From Styela clava (lineage: Eukaryota): a stretch of 64,000 bases of DNA. A program made the translations under genes and the position numbers. The DNA is taken from contig NC_135260.1 of the NCBI RefSeq assembly GCF_964204865.1, forward strand, positions 12,710,001 through 12,774,000. Direction: 5' to 3'. The notes under the pieces are model-generated. The model was not told the DNA's origin. It made no database searches and worked only from the letters and a program-made list of their open reading frames with translations. Shown here one piece after another: positions 1,398 to 12,332 of the stretch (position 1 is the first letter of the stretch; each line of letters opens with the position of its first letter).

Positions 1398-4300
1398 TTA
1401 CCTGACTTCATTTAGGGTCTTGTGATCTTCAGCTGCTCTTAAAATTGTTATGGCATCCGAATATTTGATTTCTGTATTTCTCAGATCAAGTACTTTCAAC
1501 TTTTGAAATTGCTTCAATGACTCAACAACTTTTCTTATTTCTTTACCAGTTAACGTTGATGAAACTTCGCAACTTATACCTTTATGCAGATGGCATAGAG
1601 ACTTATATTGAATGTGTTTATGAATATACCATTTTTAAATACCATTTAAAATCTATGTTTTATCACCCTGCTTTTTTCACATTATTTCTACTCACCGGAA
1701 AGGTTGAGTTCAATCAAGGTTTCTCTGACATTGGTACCTAGAGTTTGAAAAAAGTGAATTTCAACAAAAAAGCCATACTATTTACTTCAATATTTTTACA
1801 TAGCAATTAATACCTTGCAAATCGGCAATGTAGTTCAACGCATCGCAGCCCAATAAATTTTCCCCAACGCTCAGGACTTCCAGTTGTAATAAATATGAGA
1901 TATTACATCGTAAAGCGGAGAATCCAGCCTCTCCCATTTCGACGTAGTCAAGCCGTAGATCTCGCAACCTACGCAAGTTACGTAAATGTGAGGAAAATAC
2001 ACACACAACTCGATTACGAAGAAAATTTTGACTCAAATCAAGTTTCTGCAACGCCTTTAGATGACCTAATGATTCCGCAAAAGACAACAGAGACACTTGG
2101 TGATCAATATGATTAGCTCGTAGATTTAATGAGGTCAGAGTTCGTTCCAGACGAGATGACTTCACGCAGACGGTGAGAGCCGCGAGACTAGTTGGAGAGA
2201 GGCAGCATTGTCCGAGTTGAAGCTCCTGAACAAAGTATTCAAAATTGCTGCTATTTATTTCTCAATATGAATGGTAGTGCATAGTAACACTTGTAGAACT
2301 TACCTGCAGGCATCGAAATTCGTTGAAGGGTTCCTGAAAGTATTTCAATCCTCCATAAAGAGGATTATGAGAAAGATTCAGGCTGTCTAAGAACGGTGAT
2401 CGTGCAAGGTGCTGAGAGAAGAAATGGCATCGATTTTCCGTTATGTTTGATCCACACAAGTTGATATTTTTGATTGGAATTAGACATTTGGTATTGGGAT
2501 AAAAAGATAAAAAATGTTGATATGAGAGTGGCTCAATGTTGAACGATTCCAAAAATTGAAAGTTTTCAAGAACTGGCCGAAGTGCTTCATATGTTGGCAC
2601 CTGAATGCGATCAAAATGAGTTGCACATTTGAAAATAAAGGTTAGTGAATGAAGAGGTGATAGCATGTTTTGAGATATAGATTGCAGACCAGAGCAAATA
2701 GTCCTGAAATCGTTTTCGGTGATTGCTTCGATGCCCGTCAAAGTGATGTCATATAAAAATGGCAAGTTGCGAATGACCGCAGATACGAAGATCACTTGAT
2801 TAGTTTTGATGCCCGAAATGTGCAAACGCTTGATGAACGCTGTTGTTCGAATATTTGTAACACCAGTTAAAAGTGGAAATACAGTGCCGGATCGCGTTAG
2901 AGGAGGTCTACATGTACTTGTGAACTTCAGTATTGATTGCTTAGTTCTTGATGTCAGTTTATGAGGGTCCAGAATCTTTAAACTAGCAGTAATTAAATCT
3001 GAATTTTCGTAATCTTCTTTGAAATAGGTATTCACTTCATTGTTATTTTCTATATCATTTTGATTCTCGAATGACGAAGTTAAACTCCGATAGCCACTGC
3101 TCTGGTACGAAATTGAAGATACATATACGCATTGCATACACAGATTTAGTATAAAAGTGTCCTGGTCGATTCGTTTTTCAGTTGAAGCAGCTGAATGAAA
3201 ATAAAATCCAAATATTAGCGTAACGAATTCAAAATTATATCAATTGGAATACCTTGATGCTATTTTGTAAATTCAGACAACATGTATTTTTATAGCCAGC
3301 TTTTGTCATTGCCTATTTATGATAATATAATTGATTGATATTCAGCTTCGAAATTGTGTACAATCCATAGCACTGATTATATTGATTTATGCATGAAAGA
3401 AAGGTATGAATGCAAATAAGTAATTTCTCACCTAATTCACACAAAGTATCAAGTATACTTTCCGCAGCCTCGGATAGTATTTCGCAACAGAATAGCAGAA
3501 AATTGCGTAATCGAATTACATCCGAAATTTTATTGGCATATTTCGTTATCTCAGAAATTGGAAGCGAATCACAAAATACCCTAAAATTTTAATAAACAGT
3601 GAACAAATAGTAAATTATGGGAATGCAATACGATTCCCCAAATCGAAAGTGCCGTTATCGTTAGATATCACACTTGATATTTTCAAAAGTTCCTGGTAAG
3701 ATCTGTTGTTCTTCCCTACACAAAATCTCCCCCATAAACTTTGTTCAATCAATTGTGATTAAAATAAAAATTGCATCTTGAATATGATCACCTGATTGAA
3801 CAAATTGTTCAATGTATTGTTCCAACAAACTGAAAAAAAAAACAGCAACAATTTGGCTGACATAACGGGCCCCGGAGGCAGAATAAAATTTAAAGAAAAT
3901 CCAATGTTCCCTTCGTGCCCAATACATCTGCTTATTAATTTGATTTTCACAACAGCGAAAAATTCACAGCAACAAAAAAAAAATCTGGAAGAATGATCGT
4001 GCGTACCTTGCTGAAAAGTAATCTTGGAGTAATTTGTGAGAAAAAAATACTGTTGATTTATTTTCATTTTCTTCTGCCACTAATAAAATTCCAGATCTCA
4101 GAAGCGAATTTACTTGTTGATCCTGGGGATAATGTAATGTGAAAAAGGAGGTCTCGTTTAATAACGTTTCCTCTCGAACTTCGGTTTCGAATTCAGTCAG
4201 TTGGTCTGTTCGATAAGAGGAGAAATATCTGCAAACGAATAGCACAAAAGTGATTTAATTTGTATTCTGATATAACAATTATAGATTTAAAGTAAAATTG

Positions 4301-7300
4301 TTGAATACTTTTATTAATAATTATATGTATCTAAAAGTGTTTACGAATTTTAATGTTATTGTGGTTAATCGATGGAATTGTACCTTACACACTTTCACAA
4401 ATCACTTCTTTATTGAAACGGTATTACAACCTTTTACTAAGTGGGTAAATGCGTATGCCTAATTTGCACCCACCTATTGAACATTCTTACATATTTTACC
4501 TTGAAAACAAATTCTCCATTATTTTTGAAGTTGTCTCTGGCATCCATATTGTTTGTCTTTCACCTATAACGTATTTTTGATATTAATTATTGAGTATTGT
4601 TTTTATGCATATTTTCAAAATAAAATAAAAACAACTCTCACCCAAATATTCTGATAAAGACATCCAACCTTCTAACAAAATGGAAACCAACAATGGACTC
4701 GATCCTTCTCCATCATAAATATCTCGTTGGTTGATTCTTATTAAATTAGTAACATGTCTAGCTGCAGAGATAGCTCCCGTGTTTGTTTTTCTGCTTTTGA
4801 ACAATCTACCAGATTCTTCAACTACGTCATTGCTAGTAAAACCAACGACGTGAAATATTTGCCACGACACTCGTGACTCCGAGATGCATCCTGGAAAAGT
4901 GTCATCACTCTTGTAAGCATAATCTGTCGCTGTGAGAACAATACCACATTCCGACCATTGATTTCCTTTTATGACGTCAATTATTTCTGATGTTTCGTCA
5001 CACATTTTTAAACAGTCGGCATTGTCCATGAGAAACAATACGCCTCGCCCGTTACGTGTATTGAAAAGGTTTTCAATGTCGTCCACGTGCAGTTCGGACC
5101 CTGTGATAATATTGAAAAAATTAAAAACTGTCTCTAAATTATAAAAACATCTTATTAAAAAAATTGGGGGTAAATTATCGTTTACATTTTAATTTATCAA
5201 GTGTGTACCTATATAAAATAAAAATTTGGGTTATACAAAATTAAACATAAAATTTGCTGTTATAACGAATCTTAATATTTCGCAAAATATTTTCGTATAT
5301 ATAAATATGATACATATGTCTGAAGGAATGAAACTTTCACATTAAGCATAGAATAGGATAAGCTCATGTTAGAACATTAGCCTTTGATATATATATATAT
5401 ATATATATATTCATAATTCAGGGAATACAATTTCAGATTTCAATTGAATTTTGTAAGGGTTTTAACATTAGAGTTTACATTTATCCTCCTGCTTTATTCA
5501 AATATTGCGCCAATCCTACCTTCATCATCCAAACATAACACCTTAATGCAATCCGATATTCTTGTATACGGTTTTTCAAGTTGTATTTTTGTTAAATCGA
5601 TGTAAAATATCAAGTCATAGTTTTGAAGCCTTGGACTGTTTCTTGTTGCACACTCATAAGCTATTTTGTGCAGAGTGGTCGATTTTCCATAAGAACGAAT
5701 TCCGCGCAGCAAAATGCGAACTGGATCTTTATTACTGTTTGGGAACATGTTCGTCCAATTGTTTAATGTTTCATGCTTTCCTGTAATTTATTAGAAGAAT
5801 TCTTACTAGCATTTCCACAAAATGAAAAAAATTGTGAGTTATTTTCATATTTTTTTAAACATGATAAACTTAAGTATTTCATAAACAAATATTTGAAAGT
5901 TCATATTAAGCATGATTTAATGTTGGACGACTGCATCGCGAATTAAAAGACTCTGTCGATTGGTCGGTGACCGATGTAAACTAACGAAACGTCTTTAACA
6001 TGCGACTAGTTGAACCTACCCAACATGAAATATGTTTGTTTTGAAATTGAAATCTAGCAAACTTTAAAGCTCATGAGCACATATTAGCATATTTATAAAA
6101 TTGCTAAATATTTATTAGCAGAACAGCTAAATTCTGATTTCTGATTCACGCTCGAAAATCACTCTTTTTGATATTAAAAAATGTTAAAAACTAAAATTAG
6201 TTTTTATTAGAATGGACATTATTATGTTTACTTTATGCGTTCAAATTAACTACTTTATTGATATACGATAACTTTGTTGCAAAAAAAACGAATAAATTTG
6301 GGATTTACTCGAATCACCAAGACGAACTCGAATTCGAACATTGTCCATTTTTCTTTTACAGCGTTCTTTCCAAGGAAATGATAGAATGTATTTGAAACTG
6401 TTTATGACCTTTCTCTTCCAGCCCTCCCTCAGTGAGGTTGTAAAAGTAGATTCTGGTTTTAAGTCTCGAAAACAAAATTCAAATTATTTTAAAATATAGG
6501 AATACCTAAAAATATCTTTAAGGGTTATAATTCTGCTCAATATAAATATCTTTCAAATCAACTGTGATATACTTACAGCCAAAAAGTTTTTTCATATCAC
6601 AAACTATATTCTTTGTGTATTGGCGGGTAACATGAAATGATATATACATTCAGTATTATTTTCTGTAAATCAGTAGAATAGGCATAAAAATAATGCCGTT
6701 CAAATATATCTAAATATCTTGTCAGCAGAAGTAAAACAGCACGGTCATCTATAATAAATTACCGTAAACAAAATAATATTTATCATAATGACAAAGATTC
6801 AGACAAGGTAATGTTATGATATCAAGCTAGTTTTTATCAGCAAAATCACGATATGTGAGAGAAAAAACCTGGAATGTAAATTCTGTCATCAATAGACGAA
6901 TAAATGCTTTTCTCTGTCGTTGTTAATTTTGTTTTATTCTTGTTTTTATCAGTTTCGTTTATGCCTGACAACGAAATTCCGTCAATCTGATGACTGTGAT
7001 CACCTGAAATTGTATATTTCATTGTGTTAGTAGAAAGATAGTAAGAGTTGTTCATGCCTGGTGTAATAATATTATGAAATATTAGTAAGGTTCTAAATCA
7101 AAAGAAAGTAAATTGTTTTCCATTTTGATAATTGGCATCGTGGGATCATTCCATAAGCAATTGTTGTAGGGGGGTTGGGGGCATTCATTTACGCGAGAAC
7201 TATTTTGAATGAATACGATTTTATCATATATATTGCGCGCCTATTGCTGGTTGTACATCACTAGATCCTAGGAAACAAAGCGATATGGTCGCTTTATTGA

Positions 7301-10217
7301 ACCCCTAATTACATTGTTAAACACATACTCCCATTATGTTCGATTTTTTGAACCATTCATTTGCCTAAGGTTTTGCCAATTATTCTTACCATTTATCATT
7401 TCTTTCCATTGTTTATCATGAACCAAATGCCAATGAAGAATCTTTGCTGGAGATTCGGAAATCTTTAGATAATCACGGTGGCTAACATCATTTGCTTTGT
7501 GCGTGAGTACTCTTTTATCCTCACCACACTGCTCTATGTCGTTTATTCTACTTACATCCAAGTTTTTCATTTGACCAAAACATGAAATGAAATCCTTCCA
7601 TGCATCTCCAGTGTCTTGAAACTGAGATATGTAAGTAATATCATTTTTGAGGGATGTTAATTTGTTAATTTGAAAAAAAAAATCAACCGGAAATCCAGTT
7701 TTGATTCTTTTGAAATTGTTATTGTCAATGTACCAAAGGCAAAACATTACAACAAAAGTCTTTCGCTACTTCAACTTTTGTGTTAATCGGTATTTAAACG
7801 TAGTTTCTGGCTGTAATTTTTGAAAGCGTCTGTATCGCTTGAATCCAGAGATCACCTCCTTTGCCTTTACGTTCACTGTTTAAATTAATATTTTGTAGCA
7901 GCCATTCCTGATTCAAAACAACTAAATAGCCACAAAATTAATAAAGGATTAGAAAGAAAAGATTCACAAGATAGTTCAAAAGTCGTGGCTACCGCTACTT
8001 GCTCTACTTTGAACAATTCATTTACAAGCCAAGCAAACCAATGACAATGTGACAATTGTCATTCATGATCCATGCTAAAAAATACATCCAATTCGACTTG
8101 AAAAACTTTTATTATACTCACTTTAGATATTTTATCATTAAAATTTCTCTTCATAACCAAATATGTTGCGTTTCGTTGTTCCATTGGTAGGGTTTGCCAC
8201 CTCATAACTGCAACGAGGTCTAACGTTTTTCGTTTTTTGGTAACAGATTCATTTTCTTCGTAGGTAATAACGTCTTGTTTCCATCTCCTGGCAGACATTT
8301 TGAATCCGCGCAGCCTTTCTATGATCTTCGTGGCGTAGGCCAAGGAAGCATCAAAGGATTCCTTGTTTATTTCGTATTTGTGGACTATGTCTGAACACAA
8401 ATGTTATACAGACGAAATTTTACTTCGTCTATTTGTAATTGAACTCGGTATTTCTGATACATGAGGAAACCGAAAAGAGACAGCCGCGGAGCGAACCGAC
8501 AACAACGGTGTTTTTTTGGAATAAGTTTGAAGACATTGCTATTTGCTTGGCTTTACATCACTACTGATATTGGTTCTTTCATTTATCCTATGGCATATAT
8601 GCTGCTCGTGCGCTATAAACTTCAATAAAATATGGCTTTGGAAGGGCCCCAGAATAAACTAAAGGTGAACCAAATATTTACGTGTCCCCTGCGTTACTGA
8701 TACAATTGACAGATTCAGAGAATACGAATCTTGGCCTCATCTCAATATAACTGTGAATTTGATGATTATATGTAATATTTCAAAGTCCAAATGTTGATAT
8801 TTGATCTATGAGTACTCACTTTGCATTCGAACTTTAAATCTGAATAATCTGATGATGTCAAATAGTGGTGCTGTTTGGTGGACTTGGGGCTCCTCATCCC
8901 ACCATTTCCACGTAGCATGCTTGATTTTGCAAAGAAATCTAGATTATAAAATGGTAATAGAATACTTAATCGGTTTCTCGGCTTAATAGTGTACCATCTT
9001 GCATATATGAATCCAATGGTTTGTGGTTTAAAGAATTGATATGTTTACTGTGTTAGACATACGAGACTCGGAATGATTATCCAACAGTGCCAACAAATTT
9101 ACTCTATCAGGCCATACCATCGACGTTTAAAGATCAGTGAATGAATTATGTAACGTACTGTGCCAAAAAGAGAGGTTGAGTCCCGTATGCATATTTTTCT
9201 ATTCAATCTATGATATTTTGCATCACTTTGTTCATCGAATAGTAAACATTATCTGACTCAATTTCTCACGCTTGACAACATTACACTAATTGTATGTCAC
9301 AAGGGAAGGTAATTGAAGTGTAATTTACCTTATGAGGATAAATATGAGCGAAATTTCCATATTTTCTTCATCAATTTCCACGTCGTAAGAAGGGTATAGC
9401 AGGTCAAACATTTCGTGTCCAAAATATTGTTCGTCGAAGTTTTCATCAACAGTTTGTAGCAAAGATTGGAAAGATTTTTGATTTACTGCAAGTAACTATC
9501 CAGCAAATTATTAATTTTATTAAAGCAACCCAATTTTTAATGCCACTTCGGTAAGCAATCTTAGCGCCTTAAAACTGCTTTGGTATGTTATCTCACTTGC
9601 TTAGCGTAATCTCAATCGCATAATGAATTTTTTACAGAATTCAAGTCCTCACCATGTCGTCGTTCGGTTTGGATTAATACTGAAATAACTGAGATCACAC
9701 ACCGCCGAGATCGCTGTCCAAAATGACACTCAATTTTAATTTGTTTATGTGCCGGAATTACAGACAATCAAAACAATTACATAATTTACTTAAAACCAGT
9801 ACTCATCACTGAAATTTTCTAAAGTTCTAGAAACGTGAAACATTCCTTATCTTGGTGTACTACGTTATATTATAGTCGGCAAACAATGAAAAGCGTTGTT
9901 GACTGCCATACGCCTAGAGCGCCAGCCTCGCAAATATTATAACATATTGATTTTAATATTGAAACATTTTTTTAAAATTCTGCTTCGAATAAATTTCTAT
10001 ACAAAGACCTATCTTGTATTTTGAATTATTCTAATTAGCTCGCTTCTCCACACAACTCCGAATATGTTACCTGAGCGAGGTCCGGCTTTTCGTCAATTCG
10101 TCTAGGTAGATTATCCATGAGAAACCATCTCATAACATCGGTACCTTCATTGAGCAATAATCCGGACAATCTTGCCGCATATTCTAATTTTTCGGCATCT
10201 TCTTGCGCTGACGGCAT
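1398..10217 (-). CDS. NLR-like protein, ~1360 aa: DZIP3-like HEPN, possible death fold, NACHT NTPase, WHD, LRR
   Basis: Hand-spliced exons, all GT-AG and phase-compatible: 10217-10071, 9495-9329, 8938-8820, 8390-8122, 7621-7390, 7003-6869, 6452-6318, 5780-5520, 5100-4642, 4563-4500, 4228-4007, 3927-3792, 3738-3674, 3580-3432, 3190-2304, 2225-1814, 1737-1696, 1579-1398 (4083 nt). Motifs: Walker A RILLRGIRSYGKST, LIFYIDL, Walker B VLFLMDNADC, SSPLLVSIL, WHD FFSHKLLQDYFSAR, RI-like LRRs (LTSLNLRANHI, LQKLDLSQNFL, LEVLSVGENLL). The 3' end is uncertain because the TAA at 1400-1398 overlaps a possible donor site. Confidence 0.88.
5388..5409. repeat. (TA)n microsatellite in an NLR intron
   Basis: Run of TATATA... 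seen directly. Confidence 0.9.
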
Positions 10218-12332
10218 TTCAATCCAAAATAATTTTCAGCTTGAACTCAGAATATAGTTATAATATCTTATTGTAAGAATGCAAACCAACTGATATATTC
10301 ATACTTTACTTTCGTGCAGAAAAGAAACATTCTTGGTAATATGAAGTTATATACAGGTTTACCAAATATATCTCGGTTCTTTACGATTTTATTCAAGTCG
10401 TTGATTTAATATTTACAATTTGAAATTGTCTTACGTCAAGTACGAGCCAATAAACACACAGACACTTTCCACTTTACCTTGTAAGTGTACCGTCACGGTA
10501 ACGAAAAACGACTGCTCATAAAATTTAATAATTCATGTAATAACCACACTTTATCACATATATCACGTGTTTTTTACTGCAAACATGTTTGATATTAGGA
10601 TAATTCTGAGTCAGTCACTTTTGTCCCCTAAGTGTATTTAATCGTCCTTAACAATAGGCCACGATGGGCTAGCAACAAAAGCTCAAGCACTCGCTGACAA
10701 CATCGCTCGGGCGAATATGTGTGGTGTAATTTTCCGTGGCAAAAGGCTAAGTAATTCAACACTCTTTGTATTTGTTACCATACACCAGTCTTAAACAAGT
10801 TACACAAATCTTTACTATGGAAAATGAGGCGCACAATAAATTGATAGATAATTTTCTTGACATATTTAATCCATTCTGAATATTCTTTCTCTAAATTTTG
10901 GACTTATTTTGACATTCAATATGTCTTATATAAGTCGAGGAATTATGCTATGTATTTGGCAACAATTTGCCATAATATCATTCTCACAGAAATATACCGT
11001 GATATCAAAATATGATTTGCCATTCCGAAAATAGGACATTTCTTTCAAAATCTATGGCACTGGGAATACGAAATCCAAGATTTTTTATCAGTTCATTTTT
11101 CTTAAAGTTGACTCAATTTATTTCAAGAAAAAAAGCTCTCAGTAAATAATTTTTGCTCACTGTTTGAGTACATCTCACTTACAATATCTGGTTTGTTAAG
11201 GTTGAATATAGCTGTTATACACGATTTAAAGCTAAATACGAAATAAACTAAGAAGTCTTGATTTTTGGCATCCTAAACTTTGGCCAATCGAAATTGTTTA
11301 CATTCCTAACGTCGGACGATCTTTGAAGGCACGTACTGTCGTTATATATTTACGGAGGATCTCATAATGCGACTGAACAAACAAAATATCGATTTAGTGA
11401 GTAAAAGTGCTTGGAAGGCTCAGCCTACTTCGTAAGTTCCAGTTTCTCTTTTAATACATGATTGAACAAAGTTTCTTTGGTTGGTTTTGGGCCAATGATT
11501 ACTGAAGCCCCAGACGTTCGATAAACAATTGCCGTGCTATCTAGAATATACATTTATAAAATGTAACTGGCCTAAATGCACTTAATCTGATGAACAGTAG
11601 CGCAAATCAGCTTTCATCTATATTTATCTATATGTTTATTTAGAGAACAATGCGTATGACAACTGACAAGCGTAGCAAATATATTTATTAGCAAACCGCG
11701 AAATATAAACAAGAACGTGCTATTTTAAAATTAATCATACAATAAAATACTCTCAACTAAAGCAGTTTCATTCAAATGAAGACAGACGTACAAGACAGAG
11801 TTCTAGACTGTTGGCGCAAATTTCAACAAGACTTCAATTTAAATGTCCACATAAAGCACTTCTTGATTCAGCAATAAATATGTTGATAGTTTTGTTTGTT
11901 TGCCTCATATAGATTATGACCACAGTATCGCCAACTTATGGGCCTGATCTATATATAATGGTGACTCGGAATGGTCTTTCAAACATGTTTGTAACCCAAA
12001 GTAACGCTAAACTATTCAAACATTGACTGAATCTGCGTGCTTCGTTTTCAGTCTTGCGTCAAGTTGAAAGTCAGTGTTTTATCTCACCGTCTTTATTTTC
12101 GTGTCCAGGGGCTTTATTGTAGCATGTAAATGGATTCATCTTTCAGACTCATTCCCAACATTTTCTCCCTTCTCTATGAATTCATAACACGGACGAAAAG
12201 CTGCCATGTCTTCCAATCCATGGGTATTAATGTTGAATGCGTTCTTTAATTCTATTAAATATTTTTATCAAGTGGAATTCACTTAATTGACCATCACCAA
12301 TGTCTTCGATAATATTGCAATATATCCTTCAC

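What the first reader, a model, noticed from the sequence alone, without database searches (positions are those of the whole stretch)
8122..10217. Animal NLR with an N-terminal HEPN (DZIP3-like) putative ribonuclease effector hidden across four exons
Seen: splicing exons 1-4 gives EYAARLSGLLLNEGTDVMRWFL...MFDLLYPSYDVEIDEENMEISLIFILIRFLC...WWDEEPQVHQTAPLFDIIRLFRFKVRMQNIVHKYEINKESFDASLAYATKIIERLRG, in frame with NACHT and LRR. Exons 2 and 3 are missing from the ORF track. Established: as I recall it, this follows the DZIP3/hRUL138-like HEPN pattern (ARLxxLL..G..LR; LLYP; DITLL..LLRN.C; WD..P; DI.R..RN....H; F..W..I..L.RLG), and HEPN domains are dimer-activated RNases with an R-x4-6-H motif. An R-x5-H (RMQNIVH) forms only across the exon 3/4 junction. 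Inference: a receptor whose NACHT oligomerisation activates an RNase, analogous to RNase L or bacterial STAND-effector defence proteins. HEPN-NACHT fusions have been noted in other marine invertebrates but are functionally little characterised.
Basis: partly seen in the sequence, partly recalled or inferred. Interest (0 to 1): 0.8.

Follow-up and report, generated by a model that had tools for sequence, protein, structure and literature searches.

The report
Tunicate HEPN-NACHT-LRR immune-receptor-like gene
This is a real, expressed, multi-exon gene for an NLR-type receptor with a DZIP3-like HEPN domain at its front end, a domain combination already known in invertebrates, and its supposed RNA-cutting motif is not conserved in the closest relative.

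Summary
Observation confirmed. Exons 1-4 (10217-10071, 9495-9329, 8938-8820, 8390-8122, minus strand) are joined in frame to five further exons that reach the NACHT P-loop exons.

Interpretation partly supported. No single exon hits Pfam HEPN_DZIP3. However, the exons are collinear and 37-62% identical with Ciona intestinalis LOC100179518 (1291 aa). That protein scores 63.5 bits for HEPN_DZIP3 (cut-off 27) and 40.8 bits for NACHT, and has LRRs.

The R-x5-H does form across the exon 3/4 junction. The R is H or Q in the two Ciona sequences, and the residue after it is hydrophobic. A canonical RNase site is therefore doubtful.

The genome is a tunicate's: it has a GT2 and a GH6 match 2.1 kb apart on one strand. 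The gene looks single-copy. Its first exon is far better conserved than its NACHT exon.

HEPN_DZIP3-NACHT(-LRR) has been in print since 2013. The only new point is that a 2026 paper says urochordates lack such fusions. This is a new member of a known kind, of modest interest.

The parts
10218..10400 (-). 5' UTR (continues beyond 10400)
   Evidence: X1 contig of 558 nt lies on 10071-10400 and runs on past the laid stretch. In-frame TGA at 10238-10236.
10071..10217 (-). Exon 1 CDS, 49 codons, phase 0; strongly conserved first helix
   Evidence: Joint 9495/10071 in X1 and X2. 62% identical to Ciona residues 6-44. 67-78% identical to 5 of 5 exon-1-like fragments from other assemblies, each with V right after the boundary, as a read-through GT donor would give.
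9329..9495 (-). Exon 2; falls in the part of the Ciona orthologue matched by Pfam HEPN_DZIP3
   Evidence: Joints 9495/10071 and 8938/9329. 37% identical to Ciona residues 53-98.
8820..8938 (-). Exon 3; carries the R (codon 8829-8827) of R-x5-H
   Evidence: Joints in 3 of 3 RNA-like runs. 54% identical to Ciona residues 100-134. The R aligns to H (P0007) and Q (P0008).
8122..8390 (-). Exon 4; the H (codon 8382-8380), the last HEPN helix, then a conserved basic SARRWK stretch and the start of the linker
   Evidence: Joints 8390/8820 and 7621/8122. 39% identical to Ciona residues 140-216. H is conserved in 3 of 3 sequences.
6309..7621 (-). Exons 5-7 (7621-7390, 7003-6869, 6464-6309): variable linker with no recognised domain
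   Evidence: Joints. No Pfam hit. No significant match to Ciona.
5520..5780 (-). Exon 8: start of NACHT, with Walker A GxxxxGKS at 5703-5677
   Evidence: Pfam NACHT 23.4 bits, E 5.7e-05, profile positions 3-63; below the 26.7 cut-off because only part of the domain is in this exon. 36% identical to Ciona residues 360-437.
4642..5100 (-). Exon 9: rest of NACHT, with Walker B (hydrophobic run then D) at 5041-5021
   Evidence: Joints. 30% identical to Ciona residues 443-594. Only 7 relatives among 1.84 billion representatives.
4500..4563 (-). Exon 10, short; acceptor seen in RNA, donor at 4499-4498 inferred
   Evidence: Joint 4559/4638 (cut +4) in 3 of 3 runs. Sequence read.
1401..4228 (-). Downstream exons (helical domain and LRRs); boundaries inferred, not seen in RNA
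   Evidence: tblastn with the Ciona protein: residues 630-760 at 4194-3790, 717-752 at 3528-3421, 771-1179 at 3146-1839 (E 1.6e-39). Weak LRR Pfam hits. Open frames listed.

Best explanation
This is an expressed, apparently single-copy tunicate gene of at least 15 exons. It encodes an NLR-like STAND protein: an N-terminal DZIP3/hRUL138-family HEPN domain (exons 1-4), a variable linker (exons 5-7), a divergent NACHT NTPase (exons 8-9), a helical domain and C-terminal leucine-rich repeats. Shown: the splicing, the open frame, collinear homology with a Ciona protein that passes the Pfam thresholds for HEPN_DZIP3 and NACHT, and the non-conservation of the motif arginine. Inferred: ligand sensing by the LRRs and NACHT-driven oligomerisation bring the HEPN domains together. 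Because the arginine of Rx4-6H is not kept between orthologues and lacks the polar neighbour, I think the conserved job of this HEPN domain is more likely non-catalytic than canonical metal-independent RNA cleavage. That job would be proximity-induced homotypic assembly, RNA binding or partner binding. The very well conserved exon-1 helix and the basic stretch after the domain are candidate interaction surfaces.
For: Splicing and frame. Ciona LOC100179518 (P0007): HEPN_DZIP3 63.5 bits, E 2.3e-17, residues 43-166; NACHT 40.8 bits; LRR hits; name and precomputed PF18738+PF05729. Exon-wise BLASTP to P0007: E1 5.8e-15, E2 5.0e-08, E3 2.7e-15, E4 1.2e-17, E8 9.0e-19, E9 1.5e-16, all collinear; tblastn continues to Ciona residue 1179. 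Atlas: 14 of 30 feature hits for P0007 residues 1-175 are HEPN_DZIP3 clusters, score 0.95. Motif: the window has R..H with five residues between, across the junction; P0007 has H and P0008 has Q at the R position; the next residue is M or I; H is kept in 3 of 3. PMC3710099 passages say R and H are needed in tested HEPN RNases and that the residue after R is typically N, D or H. PMC9646362 passages say 194 of 202 oyster domains keep the motif, typically with N after R. Exon 1 is 67-78% identical to fragments from other assemblies, while exon 9 is 28-40% identical. No paralogue of E2, E4 or E9 was found in the own genome.
Against: No exon of the window matches HEPN_DZIP3 on its own at E <= 10, and the own-genome six-frame scan with PF18738 finds nothing in the window. 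Exon 2 alone gave no usable Atlas hit. The window protein does have an R-x5-H within the family's allowed spacing, and the H is conserved, so an active site in this species is not excluded. Only two lineages (this genome and Ciona) could be compared at the R, so Ciona may be the exception. The AF2 model of the Ciona domain is poor (pLDDT 52.5), so nothing is known about a dimer cleft. The own-genome searches score only the best candidates of a loose first look, so 'single copy' is a lower-bound statement.
Confidence: 0.55

Rival explanations
1. One reading: the HEPN domain is an active, dimerisation-dependent RNase that NACHT oligomerisation switches on, giving an RNase L-like or bacterial STAND-HEPN-like abortive or antiviral response.
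For: R-x5-H is present in the window protein across the RNA-confirmed E3/E4 junction. H is conserved in 3 of 3 sequences. In the low-confidence model, H sits at the end of the helix before the loop to the last helix, where PMC3710099 places the motif. That paper's Table 1 lists the motif as 'mostly conserved' in the family. The N-terminal domain is strongly conserved.
Against: At the R position the Ciona sequences carry H (P0007) or Q (P0008), although these two are 93-94% identical in this region. That argues the position is not constrained. The residue after R is hydrophobic. No activity data exist for any HEPN_DZIP3 domain in the passages I read.
Confidence: 0.3
2. The N-terminal region is an unrelated helical domain, and the Pfam hit on the Ciona protein is misleading.
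For: No per-exon Pfam hit. No PDB sequence match for the A2 profile at E <= 10. The fold search found only generic helical bundles. The Pfam match in Ciona starts at residue 43, so the best-conserved exon-1 helix lies outside the matched part of the model.
Against: 63.5 bits, E 2.3e-17, covering profile positions 3-120 of 144 is far above the cut-off of 27. Independent precomputed annotation gives PF18738 for both Ciona entries. Atlas feature hits agree. The fold search was run on a model too poor to count.
Confidence: 0.05
3. The locus is a decaying or non-functional NLR remnant that is transcribed without producing a working protein.
For: Retained-intron contigs exist: X1 lies on 7592-8093 and 6437-6898, and the X6 contig starts inside intron 1 at 9685. 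The NACHT is so divergent that exon 9 alone gives no Pfam hit.
Against: The frame is open over 1945 nt in nine exons. All introns are GT..AG. Homology with Ciona is collinear to residue 1179. Walker A and B are intact. The variants I worked out by hand from the table are two synonymous changes (8851, 8263) and one amino-acid change in the linker (8275).
Confidence: 0.05

Closest known systems
Ciona intestinalis uncharacterized protein LOC100179518 (P0007, 1291 aa; isoform X3 entry P0008, 1306 aa)
   Same: Same order of parts: HEPN_DZIP3, linker, NACHT, helical domain, LRR. Collinear matches for E1-E4, E8, E9 and the LRR exons. It was the only full-length relative found.
   Different: Identity is only 30-62%. 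The linker (window exons 5-7) is unrelated. The R of the window's R-x5-H is H or Q in Ciona.
DZIP3/hRUL138-like HEPN-NACHT(-LRR) proteins of cnidarians, bivalves and amphioxus (PMC3710099 Table 1; PMC8260672; PMC9646362; PMC10236652; PMC13012124)
   Same: Tripartite layout with the HEPN domain in the N-terminal effector position of an NLR (passages).
   Different: Those families are large lineage-specific expansions: 17-83 per anthozoan and more than 50 in the pearl oyster. They mostly keep Rx4-6H with N after R. This gene looks single-copy, is too divergent for per-exon Pfam detection, and its motif is not conserved between orthologues.
RNase L / Ire1 KEN domain and bacterial STAND-HEPN proteins
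   Same: The idea of a HEPN nuclease controlled by an oligomerising sensor module. PMC3710099 draws this analogy for NACHT-fused HEPN proteins of the CXorf38 family.
   Different: This is a different HEPN family, and the regulator is a NACHT rather than a kinase or ankyrin module. Nothing here shows activity. This is an analogy of mechanism, not membership.

Membership tests
Pfam PF18738 HEPN_DZIP3 | The window's own sequence scores above the gathering cut-off (27 bits) | tested here: not met
The own-genome scan found 1 weak match elsewhere (19.7 bits) and none in the window.
Pfam PF18738 HEPN_DZIP3 | A clear orthologue scores above the cut-off over the homologous region | tested here: met
   P0007 scores 63.5 bits, E 2.3e-17, residues 43-166 against profile positions 3-120 of 144. 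Window exons E2, E3 and E4 align to residues 53-216.
HEPN superfamily (catalytically active form) | Rx4-6H with conserved R and H, and a polar residue (N/D/H) after R (PMC3710099) | tested here: inconclusive
   The window has R, five residues, then H across E3/E4. H is conserved in 3 of 3. R is present in 1 of 3 (H and Q in Ciona). The residue after R is M or I.
HEPN superfamily | Four-helix up-down bundle with the motif at the end of helix 3 | tested here: inconclusive
   AF2 of Ciona residues 1-210 with a 6-row alignment: all-helical, pLDDT 52.5, pTM 0.41. Foldseek against PDB: 0 matches at E <= 0.001.
NLR (NACHT-LRR) | NACHT NTPase with Walker A and Walker B | tested here: met
   E8 scores 23.4 bits for NACHT on profile positions 3-63 (partial domain). 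GxxxxGKS and a hydrophobic run followed by D are present. The orthologue scores 40.8 bits against a cut-off of 26.7.
NLR (NACHT-LRR) | C-terminal leucine-rich repeats in the same transcript | tested here: inconclusive
   LRR families hit the 127-aa and 291-aa open frames, but below cut-off (12-18 bits). These frames are collinear with Ciona residues 771-1179, E 1.6e-39. The X6 contig runs 2240 nt past exon 9, but that part was outside the laid stretch.

The most novel reading that the evidence does not exclude
Ascidians keep one deeply conserved, non-expanded HEPN-NACHT-LRR gene, although a 2026 paper states that urochordates lack such fusions. Its HEPN domain would still be an oligomerisation-triggered RNase that uses a shifted or lineage-variable basic residue. 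Because Ciona is genetically tractable, this would be the first practical model for testing what HEPN-NLRs do in an animal close to vertebrates.
Probability: 0.25. Interest if true: 0.6.

Novelty: new member of a known kind. Interest (0 to 1): 0.3.

Why it matters
HEPN-NLRs are among the commonest non-canonical NLR architectures in invertebrates, yet the papers I read passages of describe their function only as a prediction. Two things make this instance somewhat useful.

1. It lies in a tunicate genome and has a Ciona orthologue. That conflicts with the statement in PMC13012124 (passage seen) that such fusions are absent from urochordates.
2. It appears to be a single conserved gene rather than one of a fast-turning-over array, which makes orthologue comparison and knock-out simpler.

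The non-conservation of the motif arginine warns against reading an RNase from one sequence alone.

Tried and rejected
Tried, and led nowhere:
- Per-exon Pfam scans gave no HEPN hit.
- PF18738 against the own genome gave one weak match on another contig. Its translation contains stops.
- The A2 profile against PDB sequences gave 0 hits at E <= 10.
- AF2 of the Ciona N-terminal 210 residues, with the window exons as separate rows, gave pLDDT 52.5. Foldseek against PDB on it found only designed and generic helical bundles, best E 0.54. I did not run VIA-align or a second AF2 job, because no deeper alignment could be built.
P0007 residues 1-210, and then whole P0007, each returned only the two Ciona entries. 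The A2 profile returned five exon-1 fragments and no canonical HEPN_DZIP3 protein. I therefore could not align the window's motif residue by residue to canonical family members.
- The Atlas gave no usable hit for exon 2 alone.
- The metagenome locus L005 holds a related NACHT-LRR gene. Neither tblastn nor an HMM built from A2 found exon 1-4 equivalents in the 7.7 kb upstream; the best upstream hit had E about 1. That relative may lack the domain, or the domain may lie further upstream.

Rejected:
- The ttgcag acceptor that would start exon 2 at 9485 would break the frame, and RNA uses 9495.
- An alternative donor inside exon 1 is not seen in RNA.

Not seen: supplements were closed. The list of the 'nine invertebrate taxa' with HEPN-NLRs (PMC8662601, supplementary table 6) and the NLR datasets of PMC13012124 may show whether Ciona was counted. 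A full-text search for LOC100179518 found 0 papers. Searches for HEPN with NACHT/DZIP3, with Ciona/NLR, and with tunicate terms turned up no paper describing a tunicate HEPN-NLR.

Subsets handed to calls:
- Read laying: 4 of the 12 listed runs.
- Pfam: 6 of the 7 representatives (P0003 left out).
- The listing of cluster members: 10 of the 11 fragments (P0011 left out).
Full report
**What is in the sequence**

On the minus strand, an ATG at 10217 is preceded by an in-frame TGA at 10238-10236. It opens an exon that ends at a GT donor after 10071.

I laid four of the twelve runs listed on window 4500-10400. Three were transcript-like runs from three different studies (X1, X2, X6). One was a DNA-like run (X8). 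The tool only guesses that the first three are RNA. They carry nine clean deletions with GT..AG ends on the minus strand. X8 carries none of them and lies across the introns, so I read the three as RNA-derived.

The joints fix these exons (window coordinates, minus strand):

| Exon | Coordinates | Joint support |
|---|---|---|
| E1 | 10217 (ATG)-10071 | E1/E2 joint in X1 and X2 only, short sides of 28 and 30 letters |
| E2 | 9495-9329 | E2/E3 in 3 of 3 runs |
| E3 | 8938-8820 | E3/E4 in 3 of 3 runs |
| E4 | 8390-8122 | E4/E5 in 3 of 3 runs |
| E5 | 7621-7390 | E5/E6 in 3 of 3 runs |
| E6 | 7003-6869 | E6/E7 in 3 of 3 runs |
| E7 | 6464-6309 | E7/E8 in 3 of 3 runs |
| E8 | 5780-5520 | E8/E9 in X2 and X6 (2 of 3) |
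| E9 | 5100-4642 | E9/E10 in 3 of 3 runs |
| E10 | starts at 4563 | donor not seen |

One X6 contig of 4232 nt links E2 to E9 and continues 2240 nt further. That contig begins inside intron 1, at 9685. Together with retained-intron contigs in X1, this shows some unspliced or alternatively started RNA.

Translating each exon separately, in the phase the joints dictate, gives no stop over 1945 nt. The observation, its coordinates (8122-10217) and the statement that R-x5-H exists only in the spliced product are therefore correct.

**What the gene is**

Searched exon by exon, Pfam sees nothing HEPN-like in E1-E5. The HEPN_DZIP3 model finds nothing in the window when run over the whole genome. E8 gives a partial NACHT match (23.4 bits, profile positions 3-63), and the last large open frames give sub-threshold LRR matches.

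A full HMMER pass of E9 against 1.84 billion representatives found only seven relatives. Six are exon-sized fragments. One is a full-length protein of 1291 aa, which names as Ciona intestinalis uncharacterized protein LOC100179518.

That protein scores:
- 63.5 bits (E 2.3e-17, cut-off 27) for HEPN_DZIP3 over residues 43-166;
- 40.8 bits for NACHT;
- several LRR hits.

Its database record carries PF18738 and PF05729. Its first 175 residues sit next to HEPN_DZIP3 clusters in the protein-language-model atlas (14 of 30 hits, score 0.95).

The window's exons match the Ciona protein collinearly:

| Exon | Identity | E-value |
|---|---|---|
| E1 | 62% | 5.8e-15 |
| E2 | 37% | 5.0e-08 |
| E3 | 54% | 2.7e-15 |
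| E4 | 39% | 1.2e-17 |
| E8 | 36% | 9.0e-19 |
| E9 | 30% | 1.5e-16 |

tblastn carries the match on through the helical and LRR region to Ciona residue 1179 at window 1839. E5-E7 have no counterpart, and the two Ciona entries differ from each other in this same linker.

So assigning the N-terminal domain to the DZIP3-like HEPN family rests on a clear orthologue, not on the window's own score. I left the joined protein out of all searches and folds.

**The organism**

The genome has 377 Mb in 380 contigs. It contains a Glyco_trans_2_3 match (60.8 bits) 2.1 kb upstream of a Glyco_hydro_6 match (35.4 bits) on the same strand of contig C9. From established knowledge (recalled, not from a call), a GT2-GH6 cellulose synthase is known among animals only from tunicates. 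Together with Ciona being the only named relative, I take the genome for a tunicate's.

**Copy number and conservation**

Proteins of E2, E4 and E9 find only themselves in the own genome. That search scores only the best candidates of a loose first look, so this is a lower-bound statement. The same genome holds at least 97 other NACHT matches.

Five exon-1-like fragments from other, unnamed assemblies are 67-78% identical to E1. Each reads V immediately after the exon boundary, as a conserved GT donor would give. Exon-9-like fragments are only 28-40% identical. Two pairs of an E1-like and an E9-like fragment come from contigs of the same length, 22,655 and 6,800 nt, so they probably lie in one gene. 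The front of the protein is thus held much more tightly than its NTPase.

**The catalytic motif**

In alignment A2, the window reads R, five residues, H across the E3/E4 junction.
- The H is kept in both Ciona sequences.
- The R is H in P0007 and Q in P0008, two entries that are 93-94% identical over this region.
- The residue after the R is M (window) or I (Ciona).

Passages of PMC3710099 state three things. The R and the H are required in the HEPN RNases tested. The residue after R is typically N, D or H and contributes to catalysis. The motif sits at the end of helix 3.

Passages of PMC9646362 report that 194 of 202 oyster DZIP3-like domains keep the motif, typically with N after R.

In the AF2 model of the Ciona domain, the H lies at the end of a long helix, before the loop to the last helix. 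The model is poor (pLDDT 52.5), and its fold search returned only generic helical bundles, so it proves nothing.

My reading is that the orthologue group as a whole does not depend on a canonical Rx4-6H site. The window species may have one, but with only two lineages compared I cannot tell whether R is ancestral.

**Mechanism**

Shown: the architecture and its expression.

Inferred from the general behaviour of STAND/NLR proteins: LRR-mediated release, NACHT oligomerisation, and induced proximity of the N-terminal domains.

My estimates for the N-terminal domain:

| Reading | Probability |
|---|---|
| Non-catalytic output (homotypic assembly, RNA or partner binding) | about 0.55 |
| A spurious family call | about 0.05 |
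| A decaying gene | about 0.05 |

**Comparison with what is known**

- Table 1 of PMC3710099 (2013; passages seen) already lists DZIP3/hRUL138 HEPN fused to NACHT, LRR, DEATH and CARD in animals.
- PMC8260672 calls it the commonest NACHT partner in nine cnidarians, with 17-83 fusions per anthozoan.
- PMC9646362 counts more than 50 HEPN-NACHT proteins in a pearl oyster.
- PMC10236652 notes many in corals.
- PMC8662601 (section 7 read in full) reports HEPN-NLRs in nine invertebrate taxa and says their function is only predicted.
- PMC13012124 (passage) says such fusions occur in all cephalochordates and are absent from urochordates and vertebrates. The Ciona protein and this gene contradict that for urochordates.

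I could not see the supplements that list the taxa. No paper in the library mentions LOC100179518.

**Verdict**

The domain assignment is supported through an orthologue. The RNase mechanism is unproven, and the orthologue comparison weakens it. This is a new, divergent, apparently single-copy tunicate member of a well-documented architecture. Interest 0.3.

Noticed in passing
own genome, contig C2, about 25 kb to 8.9 Mb (outside the window): By my count, 53 of the 97 NACHT matches listed lie on contig C2. Most are near-identical single-exon open frames of 465-467 aa, spaced roughly 80-130 kb apart. This looks like a very large tandem array of NACHT genes, unrelated to the split gene studied here.
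   Followed up: no
window 9590-10400: Contigs of the DNA-like run X8 break in intron 1 (loose ends at 9590, 9621, 9968) and give almost no depth over 9622-10400, while the RNA-like runs cover exon 1. This may be a structural or haplotype difference in intron 1 and exon 1 between that sample and the assembly.
   Followed up: no
window 9329-9685, 7592-8093, 6437-6898: Transcript-like contigs run unspliced into intron 1 (the X6 contig starts at 9685), across intron 4 (X1), and across intron 6 (X1, X2). This could be an alternative 5' end or retained introns.
   Followed up: partly
L005:7763-18374: A contig filed as a JGI metagenome record carries a multi-exon eukaryotic NACHT-LRR gene related to this one (28-43% identity to E8 and E9). 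No HEPN-like exons were detectable in the 7.7 kb upstream.
   Followed up: partly
own genome C9:16177301-16180164: GT2 (60.8 bits) and GH6 (35.4 bits) matches lie 2.1 kb apart on the same strand. This is the layout of tunicate cellulose synthase and was used here only to place the genome.
   Followed up: partly
P0007 vs P0008, residues about 217-300: The two Ciona entries differ by a block in the linker between HEPN and NACHT. This is the same region that is unalignable with window exons 5-7, which suggests an alternatively spliced or fast-evolving linker.
   Followed up: no
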